Source: Octopus bimaculoides (taxonomy: Eukaryota). Taken from it: a stretch of DNA of 46,004 bases. Positions 5,825 to 44,229 of this stretch are shown piece by piece. Location: assembly GCF_001194135.2 (NCBI RefSeq), contig NC_068989.1:11309841-11355844 (forward strand), read 5' to 3'. Both the position numbers and the translations under genes were made by a program. Position 1 is the stretch's first letter. Each line of letters opens with the position of its first letter. The notes below the pieces were generated by a model. That model was not told the DNA's origin. It saw only the letters and a list, made by a program, of their open reading frames with translations, and made no database searches.

Positions 5825-6290
5825 GGGCATTGACATGGTTGTGTAGAATGAAGCTTGTTTCCCAACCACATGGTTCTGGGGTCAGTCCCACTGCATGGTA
5901 CCTTGGGCAAGTGTCTTCTATTACAGCTCTGGACTGGCTAAAGACTTGTGAGTTGATTTGGTAGATGGATGGGGTCAGTCCCACTGCATGGCACCTTGGG
6001 CAAGTGTCTTCTATTACAGCTCTGGACTGGCTAAAGACTTGTGAGTGGATTTGGTAGATGGAAACAGAAAGAAGCCCGTCGTGTGTGTGTGTGTGTGTGT
6101 GACCACTGCATGTCAATCATTGTTGGTTTGTTTATGTTCCCATTACTTAGTGGTTCAGCAAATGAGAATAATAAAATAAGTACCAGTACTTAAAAAGAGA
6201 AAAAAAAAAATCAAAATGAGCGCTGGGGTCGATTTGTTCAACTGAAAGGCAGTGCCCCAGAATGGCAACAATCCAATGACTGGAAAAAGA
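5825..6290 (+). mobile_element. SINE family A with internal 93-bp tandem duplication
   Basis: Units start at 5878 and 5971. Confidence 0.88.
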
Positions 6291-9648: not shown

Positions 9649-10303
9649 TACTCTAGGCACAAGGCCCAAAATTTTTGGGGAAGTTGATTAGATCAACCCC
9701 AGTACACAACTGGTACTTAATTTATCGACCCCTGAAAGGATGAATGGCAGAGTCGACTGCACATGGAATTTGAACTCTGAACGTAAAGACAGACGAAATA
9801 CCGCTAACCATTTTACTGGCATGCTAATGTTTCTTATTTCTTTATTGCCCACAAGGGGCTAAACACAGAGGGGACAAACAAGGAAAGACAAAAGGATTAA
9901 GTCGATTACATCGACCCCAGTGCGTAACTGGTACTTAATTTATCGACCCTGAAAGGATGAAAGGCTAAGTTGACCTCGGCGGAATTTGAACTCAGAACGT
10001 AACGGTAGACGAAATACCGCTAAGCATTTTGCCTGGCATGCTAACGTTTCTGTCAGCTCGCCGCTTTAAAGTAGTAATAATATTCTTTTCTACTCTAAGC
10101 ACAAAGCCCAAATATTTGGGGAGGGGGCCAGTTGATTAGATCAACCCCAATACGCAACTGGAACTTAATTTATCGAAAACCCCTCCCCGAAAGAATGAAA
10201 GGCAAAGTCGACTGTGGCGGAATTTGAACTCGGAACATAAAGACAGAAGAAATACTGCTAAGCATTTTACCAGCATGCTAACGTTTCTGCCAGCTCTCTG
10301 CCT
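9649..10303 (-). mobile_element. SINE family B array (3 units)
   Basis: Three successive B bodies in the same orientation. Confidence 0.88.
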
Positions 10304-10304
10304 T

Positions 10305-10740
10305 TTCTAGAATTACTACAGTGATCTTTGCTTCACTTTGGGACTCTTGAAAGTCAGTAATTTTAGAAGGGAGTAGTTTGTTGATCATCTTAAGTCCTGT
10401 ACTTGAGTGGTACTTTATTTTATCAATAGTTTCATCTTTTGCCTTTATCATTTCATTTACCATAGAACTACTTGCAATGTCATGAAGTGAAACTAGCTTC
10501 TGCAGTTTGCTAGTATCGCCCTCTTGGTGCAACTGGGAGTCGTCTTTCATAGACACATAGTTGGATGGCTGTTGACTCTCATGAGTTCCTCTGCCTTTTG
10601 TTGGGTTTTGTTTTTAGTCCTGCAGGGTGTCCAAAATCACCCTTCTCACCAAGCAAGCTTAGTGGAGTTGGGGTTGCTGGTTTAGTCACCCACAACTCGA
10701 CCATGCAAGATACACAATACAAACTACCTTAACTACACAA
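10305..10740 (-). other. Non-SINE segment containing a 92-aa ORF; possible LINE 5' region remnant or exon
   Basis: Complex sequence; ORF 10278-10556 lacks clean splice boundaries and runs into SINE B. Confidence 0.3.
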
Positions 10741-11075: not shown

Positions 11076-11804
11076 NNNNNNNNNNNNNNNNNNNNNNNNN
11101 NNNNNNNNNNNNNNNNNNNNNNNNNNNNNNNNNNNNNNNNNNNNNNNNNNNNNNNNNNNNNNNNNNNNNNNNNNNNNNNNNNNNNNNNNNNNNNNNNNNN
11201 NNNNNNNNNNNNNNNNNNNNNNNNNNNNNNNNNNNNNNNNNNNNNNNNNNNNNNNNNNNNNNNNNNNNNNNNNNNNNNNNNNNNNNNNNNNNNNNNNNNN
11301 NNNNNNNNNNNNNNNNNNNNNNNNNNNNNNNNNNNNNNNNNNNNNNNNNNNNNNNNNNNNNNNNNNNNNNNNNNNNNNNNNNNNNNNNNNNNNNNNNNNN
11401 NNNNNNNNNNNNNNNNNNNNNNNNNNNNNNNNNNNNNNNNNNNNNNNNNNNNNNNNNNNNNNNNNNNNNNNNNNNNNNNNNNNNNNNNNNNNNNNNNNNN
11501 NNNNNNNNNNNNNNNNNNNNNNNNNNNNNNNNNNNNNNNNNNNNNNNNNNNNNNNNNNNNNNNNNNNNNNNNNNNNNNNNNNNNNNNNNNNNNNNNNNNN
11601 NNNNNNNNNNNNNNNNNNNNNNNNNNNNNNNNNNNNNNNNNNNNNNNNNNNNNNNNNNNNNNNNNNNNNNNNNNNNNNNNNNNNNNNNNNNNNNNNNNNN
11701 NNNNNNNNNNNNNNNNNNNNNNNNNNNNNNNNNNNNNNNNNNNNNNNNNNNNNNNNNNNNNNNNNNNNNNNNNNNNNNNNNNNNNNNNNNNNNNNNNNNN
11801 NNNN
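11076..11804. other. Assembly gap
   Basis: N run. Confidence 1.
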
Positions 11805-12754: not shown

Positions 12755-13078
12755 NNNNNNNNNNNNNNNNNNNNNNNNNNNNNNNNNNNNNNNNNNNNNN
12801 NNNNNNNNNNNNNNNNNNNNNNNNNNNNNNNNNNNNNNNNNNNNNNNNNNNNNNNNNNNNNNNNNNNNNNNNNNNNNNNNNNNNNNNNNNNNNNNNNNNN
12901 NNNNNNNNNNNNNNNNNNNNNNNNNNNNNNNNNNNNNNNNNNNNNNNNNNNNNNNNNNNNNNNNNNNNNNNNNNNNNNNNNNNNNNNNNNNNNNNNNNNN
13001 NNNNNNNNNNNNNNNNNNNNNNNNNNNNNNNNNNNNNNNNNNNNNNNNNNNNNNNNNNNNNNNNNNNNNNNNNNNNNN
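12755..13078. other. Assembly gap
   Basis: N run. Confidence 1.
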
Positions 13079-17143: not shown

Positions 17144-18034
17144 NNNNNNNNNNNNNNNNNNNNNNNNNNNNNNNNNNNNNNNNNNNNNNNNNNNNNNNNN
17201 NNNNNNNNNNNNNNNNNNNNNNNNNNNNNNNNNNNNNNNNNNNNNNNNNNNNNNNNNNNNNNNNNNNNNNNNNNNNNNNNNNNNNNNNNNNNNNNNNNNN
17301 NNNNNNNNNNNNNNNNNNNNNNNNNNNNNNNNNNNNNNNNNNNNNNNNNNNNNNNNNNNNNNNNNNNNNNNNNNNNNNNNNNNNNNNNNNNNNNNNNNNN
17401 NNNNNNNNNNNNNNNNNNNNNNNNNNNNNNNNNNNNNNNNNNNNNNNNNNNNNNNNNNNNNNNNNNNNNNNNNNNNNNNNNNNNNNNNNNNNNNNNNNNN
17501 NNNNNNNNNNNNNNNNNNNNNNNNNNNNNNNNNNNNNNNNNNNNNNNNNNNNNNNNNNNNNNNNNNNNNNNNNNNNNNNNNNNNNNNNNNNNNNNNNNNN
17601 NNNNNNNNNNNNNNNNNNNNNNNNNNNNNNNNNNNNNNNNNNNNNNNNNNNNNNNNNNNNNNNNNNNNNNNNNNNNNNNNNNNNNNNNNNNNNNNNNNNN
17701 NNNNNNNNNNNNNNNNNNNNNNNNNNNNNNNNNNNNNNNNNNNNNNNNNNNNNNNNNNNNNNNNNNNNNNNNNNNNNNNNNNNNNNNNNNNNNNNNNNNN
17801 NNNNNNNNNNNNNNNNNNNNNNNNNNNNNNNNNNNNNNNNNNNNNNNNNNNNNNNNNNNNNNNNNNNNNNNNNNNNNNNNNNNNNNNNNNNNNNNNNNNN
17901 NNNNNNNNNNNNNNNNNNNNNNNNNNNNNNNNNNNNNNNNNNNNNNNNNNNNNNNNNNNNNNNNNNNNNNNNNNNNNNNNNNNNNNNNNNNNNNNNNNNN
18001 NNNNNNNNNNNNNNNNNNNNNNNNNNNNNNNNNN
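17144..18034. other. Assembly gap
   Basis: N run. Confidence 1.
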
Positions 18035-20568: not shown

Positions 20569-21039
20569 GGCGAAATGCTTGGTGGTATTTCGCCCATCAC
20601 TACATTCTGAGTTCACATTCCGCCTAGGTCAACTTTGCCTTTCATACTTTTGGGATTGATAAATTAAATACCAGTTGTGAGCTGGGAGTTGATCTAATCG
20701 ACTGTCCTCCACCCTGGAAATTTCAGGCCTTGTGCCTATAATAGAAAGGATTATTATTATTATTAACATGGTGGTGGGCTGGCAGAATCATTAGTGCGCC
20801 AGATGAAATGCTTAGTGGTATTTTGCCTGTCATCACGTTCTGAGTTCAAATTCCGCTGAGGCCGACTTTGCTTTTCATCCTTTTGGGTTCGATAAACTAA
20901 GTACCAGTGAAACACTGGGGTCAATGTAATTGACTAGTCTCCCCCCCACCTCCTCCGGATTTCAGGCCTTGTGCCTTTAGAAGAAAGGATTATTATCATT
21001 ATTATTATTATTATTGTTATTATTATTGTTGTTGTTGTT

Positions 21040-23909: not shown

Positions 23910-24386
23910 AGCATGCAATATAGGCTCAAATTCATATGTAGGATCATGGCTGATATTTTGAGACATTTTTTGGGAAAATATTCATCTTCTCTGTCTTCAA
24001 ATGCAGTTAGCCATTTTAAAGAAAATACATTTATTTTCAAATTTATTTCAAATATGGTTACTAAAATAGAAATATTTTAAGTTTTCATTCTCATTCTTAT
24101 AAATGTTCATTCTCGCATTCATGTGTCTTCATAGACGTTTTTGTTTTTTTTGTTCTTGTTTTGTTTCCATTCTCTATTTCTTATTTTACCTACTTACCTA
24201 GCCAACCAGCCAACCAACCAACCAACCCACAGACCCAACTAACGTATCTCCCTTACCTATGTATTCTACCTACCTACCTTCCTTACCTGTCTATATTTTA
24301 CCTGTGATTTAAAGAATAAATACTAAAATGAAGTGAACTAAAGTAAAATATACCCTTTTTTGTTTCTCTTTGTCTGTAAGAAGAAA

Positions 24387-24986: not shown

Positions 24987-25407
24987 NNNNNNNNNNNNNN
25001 NNNNNNNNNNNNNNNNNNNNNNNNNNNNNNNNNNNNNNNNNNNNNNNNNNNNNNNNNNNNNNNNNNNNNNNNNNNNNNNNNNNNNNNNNNNNNNNNNNNN
25101 NNNNNNNNNNNNNNNNNNNNNNNNNNNNNNNNNNNNNNNNNNNNNNNNNNNNNNNNNNNNNNNNNNNNNNNNNNNNNNNNNNNNNNNNNNNNNNNNNNNN
25201 NNNNNNNNNNNNNNNNNNNNNNNNNNNNNNNNNNNNNNNNNNNNNNNNNNNNNNNNNNNNNNNNNNNNNNNNNNNNNNNNNNNNNNNNNNNNNNNNNNNN
25301 NNNNNNNNNNNNNNNNNNNNNNNNNNNNNNNNNNNNNNNNNNNNNNNNNNNNNNNNNNNNNNNNNNNNNNNNNNNNNNNNNNNNNNNNNNNNNNNNNNNN
25401 NNNNNNA
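24987..25407. other. Assembly gap
   Basis: N run between (CT)n and (CA)n. Confidence 1.
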
Positions 25408-30220: not shown

Positions 30221-30463
30221 NNNNNNNNNNNNNNNNNNNNNNNNNNNNNNNNNNNNNNNNNNNNNNNNNNNNNNNNNNNNNNNNNNNNNNNNNNNNNNNN
30301 NNNNNNNNNNNNNNNNNNNNNNNNNNNNNNNNNNNNNNNNNNNNNNNNNNNNNNNNNNNNNNNNNNNNNNNNNNNNNNNNNNNNNNNNNNNNNNNNNNNN
30401 NNNNNNNNNNNNNNNNNNNNNNNNNNNNNNNNNNNNNNNNNNNNNNNNNNNNNNNNNNNNNNN
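30221..30463. other. Assembly gap
   Basis: N run. Confidence 1.
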
Positions 30464-36000: not shown

Positions 36001-36143
36001 AGCAGTAGGAATAAGCAGCAGCAGCAGTAGTAGTAGTAGTAGTAGTAGCAGAAGCAACAGTAGTAGTAGCAGCAGTAGTAGTAGTAGCAACAGCAGCTGT
36101 TGTAGTAGTAGTAGTAGTAGTAACAGCTGTAGTAGTAACAGCT

Positions 36144-36200
<57 letters not shown>

Positions 36201-36404
36201 TAATAGTAGTAGTATAGCAGCAGCAACTGTAGTAGTAGTAGTAGCAACTGTAGTAGTAGTAGTTGTTGTATAGTAGTAGTAGTAGTAGTAGCAGCAACTA
36301 TAGTAGAGTAGCAGCAGCAGCAACTGTAGTAGTAGTAGTAGTAGTAGTAGCAGTAGCAGCAGCAGCAGCAGCAGCAGCAATAGTAGCAGCAGCTGTAGTA
36401 GTAG
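36001..36404. repeat. Compound (AGT)/(AGC) trinucleotide array
   Basis: Direct. Confidence 0.96.
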
Positions 36405-37190: not shown

Positions 37191-37365
37191 AGGGTCATGT
37201 ACTGGGGTTGATCTAACTCAACTCTTTCTCTCTTTATTTTCTTTCTCTTTATTCAAAATGCAGCACTACATATATTTTCATTTTATGTAGTAAGTTTCAT
37301 AAAATAAATATTAGAAAACTTTCATCTTTTGTGTTAAAAATAAACATTCATTCTTGTTACTAAGA

Positions 37366-37451
37366 TACTAATGGTTCTCTTTTTTTTTTTCTTTGTGTTT
37401 GTTTAGGTAAGTGTTTCTCTGCTACCATTTTCTTTGCTGCTAGTGGTGAGT
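37366..37451 (+). promoter_or_regulatory. Strong 3' splice site fused to a 5' splice site (candidate recursive splice site) with 39-nt exon 37407-37445
   Basis: TACTAAT (37366-72), long poly-Y, TAG|GTAAGT (37404-37412), downstream G|GTGAGT (37446-51). Confidence 0.6.
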
Positions 37452-37807
37452 ATGTTATTATTATTGGTTGTTACCTTTTAAATCGGTCTCCCTCTCTAAT
37501 ATATATATTTTTAAAAAAATAAACTAACATTAAGTCTGTAAAAGATATTTATAATAATCTTAATCTGCTTGTTACAACATTTGTGTGTTTGAGTGTTATG
37601 CTGTAAACAACCTTAACTAAGAAACTGAAATGAAGACAGAATTGAGAGTTTTGATATGGTGAAAACAAGTTGGAGGATTATGTTCTAAACAACGTTAACT
37701 ATAGAATAAAATCAAATTATTATTGAAATTTTTAATGTTACCAAACAGTTCTCTGAAAATCCATAAATTTATGTTTCAAAATAGAATATATATATATATA
37801 TATATAT

Positions 37808-38006
37808 CGCCATGATTAATCGCTGACCAAAACATTCAATTTTTTTTCTCCGTGTTTTTCTCCTTGTTTTCTCCGTATTCTTTCTGTTGAAGAGCGTAGC
37901 TCGAAACATTAAAGACTTTCTGCATTCCTGAGCGTCAAACTAATACATCCTTTTGTTGTTTACACCACCTGTCCTCGTCTGTTGTTGTTTTTTTTCGTAA
38001 ATTCTC

Positions 38007-38846: not shown

Positions 38847-39233
38847 ATGAGACGTGTGTCTGCCAAATTTGTGCCAAAACTATTTTCAGCTGACCACTCA
38901 GGTTTCAGTTGCACAAGATCTTGATTGTGTCAAGAACAATGAAAACTTTTTGAAAATTTTGCGTAGGACTCTGAGCAGGTATCGCCAAGTTTTTGGCAAA
39001 ATTTGATGCAGGTTTTCTGCTCAACTTTCTCTGTCATGGTCAATGTAATGATCATACACTACACACCTTCCTTCCAAGCATTGCTGGACACAGCGGAAGT
39101 GAGCTAGAATGTTAAAATTTAGTGCACCTGTACTGAAGAATTTAAGGTCAATCTTTGCCTAGTGGCTTTACTTTGCATGCTTTGGTTTCGTTACTATGGC
39201 AACAGTCCGGTTACTTATTGATCAGACCACGTA
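38847..39233 (-). mobile_element. Tc1/mariner transposon remnant, internally inverted, non-functional
   Basis: Minus strand: TA-TIR-like end at 39233, then ATG at 39037 MTEKVEQKTCIKFCQKLGDTCSESYAK; plus strand 38847: MRRVSAKFVPKLFSAD then, frameshifted, QVSVAQDLDCVKNNENFLK; both resemble mariner transposase motifs. Confidence 0.88.
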
Positions 39234-40301
39234 TAATGTAAAACATCTCATTTGGTTTCAGACTTGTTCCACTGCTTGACATGATAAGCATATTTCTTCC
39301 ATTATACTCTTAAGGTAACCAGTATCTTGTGTGTGGGAAATGGAAAAATTTGGTTGAGAGACATTATGCTGAAGTACGTCTTGTGTGTGTGTATGTGTGT
39401 GTGTGTGAGAGAGAGAGAGAAAGGGAGAGAGAGAGAGAGAGAGAGAAAGGGAGAGAGAGAGAAAGAGAGATCAATATTGTTAACATTATCACACAGTGCT
39501 CTGCAGATCCAGAAATTTATACATCAAAGTAGCAATAAAAAAAAAATATTAAAAAAATTATAAAGTGTAAAATATCCGTGTGTCTGCGTCTATTGGGTAC
39601 AGTGACAGTGTTTGTGAGTTTAAGGTGCTAGACTACCTCACCTTGTGTTATTAAGTTCTGATGTTTAACTTATACTAGGCCCATTGTTGTTGTGCTCCTG
39701 AGCAAAGCACACTCACATAACATTTGCTTCTGTAGGTAATTTGCCTGGCTGTGACGGAAAACAGGTTCCCATCTTCATGGTTGAATTATGCATATTTGGT
39801 ATTTGAAAAAAAACAACAAAAAAAAAGAACAAGTTGTAAAAAGAAAAAAGAACAAATAGACTCGTTCCAATTGAACCCCTTTCATAGTAGTCTGCTCTGA
39901 AGTTGTAGGGTTATTTGTATGATGATTTTTGTTTTTATAAAGTAGCATACGCAACACTCCTTTCTGGTGTGGCTGTCTATCCTATTATGGATATGTGTGG
40001 AATTCTTCTTACACGATACAGTGAGACTCCTTCTTCTCCTCTGTATTGAGACTCATTACAGAATGACCTCTCCTCCTCCTCCACCCTCTCTCTTTATCTT
40101 TCTCTCTTTCTCTCTCTCTGTGCTCTGTACTTTCCCTGTTTATATTCTGTGTGTAACTCTTTCCTATTCTGACTGTTAATTGTCCACATTTTTGTTGAAG
40201 TCAGATGCGTGTTCTTCATGTAGGCACAGCATGGTTAAGTAATGGTTCAGAAGAAGTTCGCTTCACAGTCACAAACAAGGTCCCCCCCCCCNNNNNNNNN
40301 N

Positions 40302-43928: not shown

Positions 43929-44229
43929 AAAGAATAAGAAGTTTTGAATGGTACAACAATGCACTATAATACAAAAAATGGACTATCTACCTGTTGTCAT
44001 TTAGTCATCCATAGTCCGATGATATTTTGGAATACAATTCCTCCTTCAGATATTCTTAGATGGAGTCGCTGCTATAATCGGTTTTCCAGCGACTCCATCT
44101 AAGAATATCTGAAGAAGGCATTGTATTCTGAAATATCATCGGACTATGGATAACTAAATTACAACAGGTAGATAGTCCATTTTTTGTATTATAGTGCATT
44201 GTTGTACCATTCAAAACTTTTTATTCTTT
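43929..44229. repeat. 301-bp near-perfect palindrome (143-bp arms, 15-nt loop); probable inverted Penelope-like repeat pair
   Basis: Arms 43929-44071 and 44087-44229; each arm has a decayed HHR motif. Confidence 0.93.

What the first reader, a model, noticed from the sequence alone, without database searches (positions are those of the whole stretch)
37366..37451. Candidate recursive splice site (AG|GTAAGT) with a 39-nt RS-exon
Seen: branch-like TACTAAT at 37366-72, ~30-nt pyrimidine tract, TAG at 37404-06 immediately followed by a perfect donor GTAAGT, and a second donor G|GTGAGT 39 nt later, all in non-repeat sequence. Established: this juxtaposition plus a downstream cryptic donor is the architecture of recursive (ratchet) splice sites in Drosophila and vertebrate long introns. 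I am not aware of it being described in cephalopods. The 39-nt exon preserves frame (phase 1: GKCFSATIFFAAS), so it could instead be a regulated micro-exon. It implies a plus-strand host gene.
Basis: partly seen in the sequence, partly recalled or inferred. Interest (0 to 1): 0.8.

Follow-up and report, generated by a model that had tools for sequence, protein, structure and literature searches.

The report
Recursive-splice-like site in octopus DNA
A stretch of octopus non-coding DNA carries a complete, strong set of splicing signals arranged like a known "recursive" splice site, rarer than chance predicts for one window, but sequence alone cannot show that the cell uses it.

Summary
On the + strand there is a branch-like TACTAAT, a 30-nt tract that is 90% pyrimidine, TAG|GTAAGT, and a second donor G|GTGAGT 39 nt later. 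The octamer AGGTAAGT alone is at chance level: 3 seen, 1.6 expected. The combination is not. Of 249 AGGT sites in the window it is the clear outlier. The expected number of tract+AGGTRAGT sites per 46-kb window is about 0.003-0.017, and about 0.001 or less with a strong donor downstream. Across an octopus-sized genome that still allows tens of chance copies.

The architecture meets every sequence-level criterion of a fly or vertebrate recursive site with a short RS-exon. The functional criteria could not be tested. No coding exon or host gene was found in the window, no orthologous locus could be fetched, and no RNA data were available. A steady T>A excess on the + strand hints weakly at + strand transcription. 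The 39-nt, frame-preserving length fits a cassette exon as well as a cryptic RS-exon.

Verdict: a plausible, unproven candidate. Probabilities: about 0.4 used as an RS-type exon, about 0.4 unused chance motif, about 0.12 plain micro-exon. If real, it is a new member of a known kind.

The parts
37366..37372 (+). Branch-point-like TACTAAT (CUAAU core). The putative branch A is at 37371, 35 nt upstream of the acceptor G. A weaker TTACTAAG lies just upstream at 37357-37364.
   Evidence: Read directly. It matches the CUAAY branch-point consensus quoted in PMC8797185. Its function is inferred.
37365..37404 (+). AG-exclusion zone: 40 nt with no AG between the branch region and the acceptor.
   Evidence: Read directly. 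The last upstream AG is at 37363-37364.
37375..37404 (+). Polypyrimidine tract: 30 nt, 27 of them pyrimidines, including a T run at 37380-37390.
   Evidence: Only 0.41% of the AG dinucleotides in the window have an upstream tract this pyrimidine-rich.
37405..37406 (+). Candidate 3' splice-site AG, in the context TAG|G.
   Evidence: Acceptor score ranks 7th of 5067 AG dinucleotides on both strands (approximate position-weight matrix from general knowledge).
37407..37412 (+). Candidate regenerated ('ratchet') 5' splice site GTAAGT. AG|GTAAGT is a perfect 8-nt complement to the 5' end of U1 snRNA.
   Evidence: Donor score ranks 13th of 5152. The U1 complementarity of AGGTAAGT is stated in PMC8797253.
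37407..37445 (+). Candidate 39-nt RS-exon or micro-exon. It is pyrimidine-rich and open in two of three frames. An internal acceptor-like CTAG lies at 37440-37443.
   Evidence: for translation and length; for the acceptor-donor pair.
37446..37451 (+). Downstream competing 5' splice site GTGAGT, in the context GTG|GTGAGTAT, followed by T-rich sequence.
   Evidence: Donor score ranks 14th of 5152. GTRAGT density is 0.55 per kb per strand, which gives about a 5% chance of one within 100 nt.

Best explanation
On the + strand this is a complete exon-definition unit of the recursive (RS-exon) type.

Shown: a branch-point-like CUAAU, a 40-nt AG-free zone, a 30-nt pyrimidine tract, an acceptor AG, 39 nt, then a strong donor. 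The first six bases of the 39-nt unit are themselves a consensus donor.

Inferred mechanism, if the + strand is transcribed as part of a long intron. U2AF and U2 bind the tract and branch site, and U1 binds the downstream GTGAGT. The 39-nt unit is thereby defined as an exon and spliced to the upstream exon, removing the first part of the intron. That ligation places GTAAGT directly after the upstream exon and recreates a 5' splice site. This regenerated donor then competes with the downstream donor at 37446. The two score about equally here, so the last bases of the unknown upstream exon would decide the outcome. If they end in AG or G, the ratchet donor should win. The 39 nt are then removed with the rest of the intron and leave no trace in mRNA, which is recursive splicing. 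If the ratchet donor loses, the 39 nt are kept in frame as a small cassette exon.

I put use of this acceptor in vivo with RS-type behaviour at about 0.4. That is essentially level with the null hypothesis of an unused chance motif.
For: All sequence elements are present at the stated coordinates. Of 249 AGGT sites in the window this one is the outlier for combined acceptor and donor strength, 18.3 against 14.0 for the next. The acceptor ranks 7th of 5067 and the donors rank 13th and 14th of 5152. Chance expectation per window is 0.003-0.017 for tract+AGGTRAGT and about 0.001 or less with a strong donor 15-100 nt downstream. A Markov model trained on the T/G-rich local composition gives only 1e-4 per 171 nt.

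The site lies in sequence that is unique within the window and against a 24-kb O. vulgaris locus, so it is not part of a high-copy repeat. No coding exon was recognised anywhere in the 46 kb. That is what a very long intron would look like, and recursive sites occur in introns over 40-50 kb (PMC6110457, PMC8797253). T exceeds A on the + strand by 6.5% in unique sequence, in all ten 5-kb bins, and by 5.9% after homopolymer runs are removed. T>A on the coding strand of introns is reported as general in eukaryotes (PMC5786239). The one octopus gene I could fetch shows +4.2% on its sense strand against about 0 in its flanks (n=1).

The architecture matches published descriptions: a tandem acceptor|donor, a short cryptic RS-exon of about 50 nt with a downstream donor, and enrichment of AGGTAAGT and of the pyrimidine tract at true sites (PMC8605326; PMC8797253).
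Against: There is no evidence of transcription, of a host gene or of its strand. The window may be intergenic, since the absence of exons fits that equally well. The exon search was incomplete: only ORFs of at least 35-40 codons in non-repeated sequence were used, and only the 96 most protein-like of 219 went into the homology search. Conservation could not be tested.

Extrapolating the chance rate to a roughly 2.7-Gb genome gives hundreds of tract+AGGTRAGT sites and about 10-50 with a downstream donor. In mouse only 19-20 recursive sites exist among millions of AGGT sites (PMC8797253). If octopus resembles vertebrates, the predictive value of a motif alone is low.

Cryptic RS-exons in flies are 'generally out of frame' (PMC8605326). 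This one is 39 nt and open in two frames, which fits an ordinary cassette exon better. The features were picked after the fact by a reader scanning for anything interesting. The T>A skew could instead reflect repeat orientation or replication. My splice-site matrices are approximate, not octopus-trained.
Confidence: 0.4

Rival explanations
1. Unused chance motif. T- and G-rich low-complexity non-coding DNA happens to spell a pyrimidine tract, AG|GTAAGT and a nearby GTGAGT. The site is intergenic, antisense or simply ignored by the spliceosome, and has no function.
For: AGGTAAGT alone is at chance frequency, 3 against 1.63 expected. T-rich tracts and T/G-rich simple sequence are common nearby, for example 37233-37253, 37841-37885 and many microsatellites. 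Strong acceptor-donor pairs 25-300 nt apart occur at two other loci in the window, both on the - strand and neither looking coding. No exon, no host gene and no RNA family were found. Extrapolation gives about 10-50 equally good chance sites per genome. In mouse nearly all AGGT sites in long introns are unused (PMC8797253).
Against: The per-window expectation for the full combination is about 0.001 or less. It is the single outlier among 249 AGGT sites. A strong branch-point-like motif and a 40-nt AG-free zone are also present. The + strand carries the T>A bias expected of a sense strand.
Confidence: 0.4
2. Conventional small cassette, poison or unannotated exon. The acceptor at 37406 and the donor at 37446 define a 39-nt exon that is included in some transcripts, possibly neuron-specific. 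The GTAAGT at its start is incidental and is not used as a donor.
For: The length of 39 nt is a multiple of three and two frames are open. The long AG-exclusion zone, long pyrimidine tract and strong CUAAY branch site are three of the four cis-features reported for eMIC-dependent neuronal microexons (PMC8797185). In mouse, 46 of 84 AGGT sites with junction reads turned out to be unannotated exons, against 19 recursive sites (PMC8797253).
Against: No UGC motif lies between the tract and the AG, and that is the fourth eMIC feature. At 39 nt it is longer than the usual limit of 27 nt or less. The encoded peptides are hydrophobic and of low complexity, and no protein match could be sought for 13 residues. 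Two open frames in 13 codons of this composition is unremarkable. A consensus donor at the first base of an exon would be expected to compete, because donor competition decides the outcome in flies (PMC8605326).
Confidence: 0.12
3. Only one of the signals is real. For example, TAG|GTAAGT is the 5' splice site ending an upstream non-coding (UTR or lncRNA) exon. Alternatively, the element acts on the - strand.
For: MAG|GTRAGT is also the ordinary context of an exon-end donor (general knowledge). Non-coding exons would not have been found by my protein-based exon search.
Against: The upstream 'exon' would consist of a 30-nt pyrimidine tract. Nothing on the - strand stands out: there is only a 22-codon ORF, no Rfam match and no structure beyond shuffled controls, z = -0.4.
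Confidence: 0.05

Closest known systems
Drosophila intronic ratchet points with cryptic RS-exons (Ubx, kuz, Bx; more than 500 sites; PMC8605326, PMC6110457)
   Same: A tandem strong acceptor and consensus donor around AG|GT, with a long pyrimidine tract. A short downstream unit is bounded by a second donor: about 50 nt in flies, 39 nt here. The expected setting is a very long intron, and the predicted logic is donor competition.
   Different: Fly sites are defined by RNA evidence and are ultraconserved; neither is known here. Fly cryptic RS-exons are generally out of frame, whereas this one preserves the frame. The acceptor context is TAG rather than the CAG I recall as more usual in flies (own knowledge). 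The organism is a cephalopod, where no such site is described in the held literature.
Vertebrate recursive sites and RS-exons in long neuronal genes (Sibley et al. 2015, as cited in PMC8605326; mouse set in PMC8797253; EJC-repressed annotated RS-exons in PMC6224609)
   Same: Recognition of an RS-exon by exon definition, followed by use of the regenerated 5' splice site. True sites are enriched for AGGTAAGT and for a pyrimidine tract. Genome and intron sizes are comparable to those of octopus.
   Different: The vertebrate sites lie in introns over 51 kb in genes over 294 kb, mostly in the first two introns, and are conserved. The host gene, intron and position are unknown here. They are rare (19-20 in mouse), which lowers the prior for any single motif match.
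Neuronal microexons dependent on the eMIC domain of Srrm proteins (PMC8797185)
   Same: A short frame-preserving unit, a long AG-exclusion zone, a long pyrimidine tract and a strong CUAAY branch site.
   Different: No UGC motif lies next to the 3' splice site. At 39 nt it exceeds the usual limit of 27 nt or less. The fly eMIC exons in that paper have weak splice sites, whereas both are strong here. Inclusion in mRNA is unknown.

Membership tests
Recursive splice site (ratchet point with RS-exon) | [quoted passage not shown] | tested here: met
   TAG|GTAAGT at 37404-37412. It is the top combined score among 249 AGGT sites.
Recursive splice site (ratchet point with RS-exon) | Strong polypyrimidine tract and usable branch point upstream of the AG | tested here: met
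   27 of 30 bases are pyrimidines at 37375-37404. TACTAAT sits 35 nt upstream and the AG-free zone is 40 nt. This was tested on sequence only.
Recursive splice site (ratchet point with RS-exon) | Downstream 5' splice site that defines a short RS-exon for exon definition | tested here: met
   GTG|GTGAGT at 37446, 39 nt downstream, ranks 14th of 5152 donors. Fly RS-exons are about 50 nt (PMC8605326).
Recursive splice site (ratchet point with RS-exon) | Lies on the sense strand inside a long intron (over about 40-50 kb) of a transcribed gene | tested here: inconclusive
   No coding exon was recognised in 46 kb, which fits either a long intron or intergenic DNA. T>A of +6.5% on the + strand is a weak hint of sense orientation. 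The host gene was not identified.
Recursive splice site (ratchet point with RS-exon) | RNA evidence: upstream-exon-to-site junction reads, saw-tooth nascent coverage, lariats | not testable with these tools
Recursive splice site (ratchet point with RS-exon) | Evolutionary conservation of the acceptor|donor core above the flanks | not testable with these tools
   No orthologous locus could be fetched. Local ORFs have no counterpart in the protein collection, and an exact 28-mer is absent from metagenome contigs. The only octopus DNA retrieved is an unrelated locus.
Recursive splice site (ratchet point with RS-exon) | Cryptic RS-exon is usually out of frame or disruptive (a tendency in flies, not a strict criterion) | tested here: not met
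   39 nt is 13 codons and two frames are open. PMC8605326 reports that cryptic RS-exons are generally out of frame.
Neuronal (eMIC-type) microexon | Very short frame-preserving exon (usually 27 nt or less; some definitions allow up to 51 nt) | tested here: inconclusive
   At 39 nt it preserves the frame but exceeds the strict limit. The length limits are from my own knowledge.
Neuronal (eMIC-type) microexon | UGC motif close to the 3' splice site, with a long AG-exclusion zone, long pyrimidine tract and strong CUAAY branch site | tested here: not met
   The AG-exclusion zone, tract and CUAAU are present, but there is no TGC between 37373 and 37406. The features are taken from PMC8797185.
Neuronal (eMIC-type) microexon | Inclusion in mature mRNA or protein | not testable with these tools
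   A 13-residue peptide is too short for a significant database match, and no transcript data were available.

The most novel reading that the evidence does not exclude
This is a genuine ratchet point. Octopus would then remove at least some of its very long introns stepwise through cryptic RS-exons. It would be the first recursive splice site in a lophotrochozoan, and it would imply that the RS-exon mechanism is ancestral to bilaterians rather than a feature of flies and vertebrates only. It would also imply a genome-wide class of such sites in cephalopod long neuronal genes.
Probability: 0.3. Interest if true: 0.55.

Novelty: new member of a known kind. Interest (0 to 1): 0.3.

Why it matters
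Recursive splicing is documented in flies (hundreds of sites) and vertebrates (a handful to a few hundred). The library searched holds no paper that links it to octopus, and only incidental co-mentions for cephalopods and molluscs.

Coleoid cephalopods have vertebrate-sized genomes (own knowledge). How their long introns are removed accurately has not been addressed in that literature. A validated site would extend the mechanism to the third great bilaterian branch. It would also give a concrete locus for RT-PCR and minigene tests of donor competition.

The extension would not surprise specialists, because the spliceosomal logic is generic. One unvalidated motif match is a lead, not a discovery. 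The more valuable output may be the test it suggests: compare the frequency of strict tract-AG|GTRAGT motifs on the sense and antisense strands of long octopus introns.

Tried and rejected
(1) Rfam at gathering thresholds on the whole window gave no match.

(2) Search for a host-gene exon. 156 stop-to-stop ORFs of at least 40 codons from non-repeated sequence were run against Pfam with no family found. The 96 most protein-like ORFs (4984 aa) were searched against 5.8 billion proteins with no hit. Amino-acid composition scores of all the ORFs are near zero.

(3) Orthologous or transcript contigs. ORFs around the site gave no hit. An exact 28-mer search of metagenome contigs gave 0.

(4) Calibration on real octopus genes. 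An octopus rhodopsin query reached O. vulgaris chromosome OX597836.1, but the gene is only 4.3 kb and the locus only 24 kb. That was enough to confirm octopod origin through shared repeats. It was too little to calibrate motif frequency or skew.

(5) Local duplication, inverted repeats and RNA structure around the site showed nothing beyond low-complexity matches; the fold z-score was -0.4.

(6) Poly(A)-signal depletion as a strand indicator. AATAAA occurs 46 times and TTTATT 74 times, a ratio of 1.6 against 1.4 expected from base skew, so it is uninformative.

(7) From memory, the ORF at 38933-39058(-) resembled a mariner transposase N-terminus. Pfam did not support this, so I dropped it.

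(8) A first Markov simulation timed out and was rerun in vectorised form. Duff et al. 2015 was not held in the library.

Full report
WHAT IS THERE. Read base by base, the + strand carries the following. TACTAAT lies at 37366-37372, with a weaker TTACTAAG just upstream. No AG occurs from 37365 to 37404. A 30-nt tract at 37375-37404 contains 27 pyrimidines. TAG lies at 37404-37406 and is followed directly by GTAAGT at 37407-37412. After 39 nt (37407-37445) comes GTG|GTGAGT, with the donor at 37446-37451. The 39 nt are open in frame 0 (VSVSLLPFSLLLV) and frame 2 (KCFSATIFFAAS); frame 1 has two stops.

CONTEXT. The window is a draft eukaryotic assembly with nine N gaps totalling 2647 N. It has many microsatellites, and 42% of it is repeated within itself. 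It shares 127 interspersed-repeat matches (78-92% identity, roughly 130-430 bp) with a 24-kb stretch of Octopus vulgaris chromosome OX597836.1, which I reached through the rhodopsin gene. An octopod origin is therefore supported. The candidate sits in 37200-37800, which has no second copy in the window or in that octopus locus. 'Non-repeat' thus holds as far as it can be tested. A repeat fragment ends about 190 nt upstream, and T-rich tandem units begin about 430 nt downstream.

IS IT MORE THAN CHANCE? The octamer AGGTAAGT alone is not: it occurs 3 times on both strands against 1.63 expected. The combination is.
- Only 0.41% of 5062 AG dinucleotides have at least 85% pyrimidines in the preceding 22 nt.
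- With approximate metazoan splice-site matrices from general knowledge (not octopus-trained), the acceptor ranks 7th of 5067 and the two donors rank 13th and 14th of 5152.
- Among all 249 AGGT sites this one is the outlier, with a combined score of 18.3 against 14.0 for the next.
- The expected number of tract+AGGTRAGT sites per window, both strands, is 0.007-0.017 by independence.
- In 1000 Markov simulations per order it is 0 at order 1, 0.003 at order 3 and 0.009 at order 5. With a GTRAGT 15-100 nt downstream it is about 0.001 or less.
- A model trained on the local T/G-rich composition gives 1e-4 per 171 nt.

By extrapolation (inference), a roughly 2.7-Gb genome would still hold hundreds of chance tract+AGGTRAGT sites, and about 10-50 with a strong downstream donor. 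The site is therefore unusual for a single window but not unique in a genome. How surprising it is depends on how many windows the first stage read, which I do not know. Strong acceptor-donor pairs as such are not rare. Two other loci in the window have them, both on the - strand, one in simple sequence and neither looking coding.

HOST GENE AND STRAND. I looked for coding exons on both strands.
- Pfam found no family in 156 unique ORFs of at least 40 codons.
- The 96 most protein-like ORFs (4984 aa) found no relative among 5.8 billion proteins. That collection does hold octopus proteins.
- ORFs next to the site found nothing either.
- Composition scores of all the ORFs are close to zero.
- Rfam found nothing.

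So no recognisable coding exon lies in the 46 kb, which fits either a very long intron or intergenic DNA. The search is incomplete: short exons, exons in repeats and the lower-ranked ORFs were not covered.

The only strand indicator is compositional. T exceeds A on the + strand by 6.5% in unique sequence, and the skew is positive in all ten 5-kb bins. It is still 5.9% after homopolymer runs are removed. T runs of at least 8 outnumber A runs 29 to 14. GC skew is zero. T>A on the coding strand of introns is described as general in eukaryotes (PMC5786239). The one octopus gene I could examine shows +4.2% on its sense strand against about 0 in its flanks (a single case). This is a weak hint that + is a sense strand. 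Repeat orientation or replication could produce the same skew. Poly(A)-signal counts add nothing.

COMPARISON WITH KNOWN SYSTEMS. Fly ratchet points are tandem acceptor|donor motifs in long introns. They need a short cryptic RS-exon of about 50 nt with its own downstream donor. Donor competition then decides between skipping and inclusion. [quoted passage not shown] They are common in fly introns over 40 kb (PMC6110457).

In mouse brain only 19-20 sites exist, in introns over 51 kb of genes over 294 kb. They are enriched for AGGTAAGT and for pyrimidines upstream. Of 84 AGGT sites with junction reads, 46 were simply unannotated exons (PMC8797253).

The present site meets all the sequence-level criteria. 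It departs from the fly tendency in being frame-preserving. It also shows three of the four cis-features of eMIC-type neuronal microexons: a long AG-exclusion zone, a long tract and a CUAAY branch site. It lacks the UGC motif next to the 3' splice site (PMC8797185). The criteria that actually define recursive splicing could not be tested with the tools available. These are sense-strand location in a long intron, junction, saw-tooth or lariat reads, and conservation.

MOST LIKELY MECHANISM AND ODDS. If the + strand is transcribed through here, these signals should be recognised by exon definition (inferred). The 39-nt unit would be ligated to the upstream exon. GTAAGT would then be regenerated as a 5' splice site and would compete with GTGAGT at 37446. 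The two donors score about equally in genomic context, so the end of the upstream exon would tip the balance. The outcome is either removal of the 39 nt (recursive splicing) or in-frame inclusion.

I weighed the extrapolated chance count against plausible numbers of true sites, from mouse-like tens to fly-like hundreds, and against the small number of ordinary exons that would begin with GTRAGT. This gives about 0.4 for RS-type use, about 0.4 for an unused chance motif, about 0.12 for a plain cassette or poison exon, and about 0.05 for other readings. These odds are inference and are sensitive to the unknown abundance of recursive sites in octopus.

NOVELTY AND VERDICT. The held literature has no paper combining recursive splicing with octopus, and only incidental co-mentions for cephalopods or molluscs. 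If validated, this would be a new member of a known kind, the first in a lophotrochozoan. That would be a modest and not very surprising extension. As it stands it is a well-formed, statistically unusual and untested candidate. The decisive data are simple to obtain elsewhere: the annotation of the source locus, total or nascent RNA-seq, alignment with other octopus genomes, and a genome-wide sense-versus-antisense count of the motif.

Noticed in passing
window 43929-44229: A near-perfect foldback: two 143-nt arms (43929-44071 and 44087-44229) are 95% complementary and separated by 15 nt. It could be a MITE-like or foldback element, or a long hairpin RNA source. The two arms give mirror-image ORFs on opposite strands.
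   Followed up: partly
window 1-46004 (+ strand): A consistent T>A excess on the + strand: +6.5% in unique sequence, positive in all ten 5-kb bins, and +5.9% without homopolymer runs. GC skew is zero. T runs of at least 8 number 29 against 14 A runs. This is compatible with + being the sense strand of a transcribed region, but it is not proof.
   Followed up: partly
window 37440-37451: Inside the 39-nt unit there is a second acceptor-like signal: the pyrimidine-rich ...TTTTCTTTGCTGCTAG, ending at 37443. It ends only 2 nt before the downstream donor GTGAGT. The region therefore holds two tract-TAG-donor arrangements 37-39 nt apart.
   Followed up: no
window 39642-39744 (- strand) and 24198-24373 (- strand): These are the only other strong acceptor-donor pairs in the window by my rough matrices. 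The first bounds a 103-nt unit that does not look coding. The second lies in CT-microsatellite and GGTT-type simple sequence, with several GTAAG donors in a row.
   Followed up: partly
window 10281-10613 (- strand): This 111-codon ORF is the most protein-like of the longer open frames in unique sequence by composition. It has no Pfam family and no relative in 5.8 billion proteins. ORFs of this length are expected a few times by chance at this base composition.
   Followed up: yes
window 36026-36404: A 379-bp (AGT)n microsatellite (about 128 units, 80% matches) lies about 1 kb upstream of the candidate. It produces long serine-, leucine- and tyrosine-rich pseudo-ORFs on both strands.
   Followed up: no
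window 38933-39058 (- strand): The peptide EKVEQKTCIKFCQKLGDTCSESY reminded me of the N-terminal helix-turn-helix of mariner-type transposases. A Pfam scan at E up to 0.1 found nothing, so the resemblance is unconfirmed.
   Followed up: yes
window 5877-6062 and 20572-21004: Two tandem duplications: a 93-nt unit present twice at 97% identity, and a 233-nt unit present 1.8 times at 77%. Both lie within regions repeated elsewhere in the window, and the second region also matches the Octopus vulgaris rhodopsin locus.
   Followed up: no
window 11076-11804, 12755-13078, 17144-18034, 24987-25406, 30221-30463 and four 10-N gaps: There are nine assembly gaps totalling 2647 N, mostly flanked by microsatellites. 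The window comes from a gapped draft assembly, so distances across these points are estimates.
   Followed up: no
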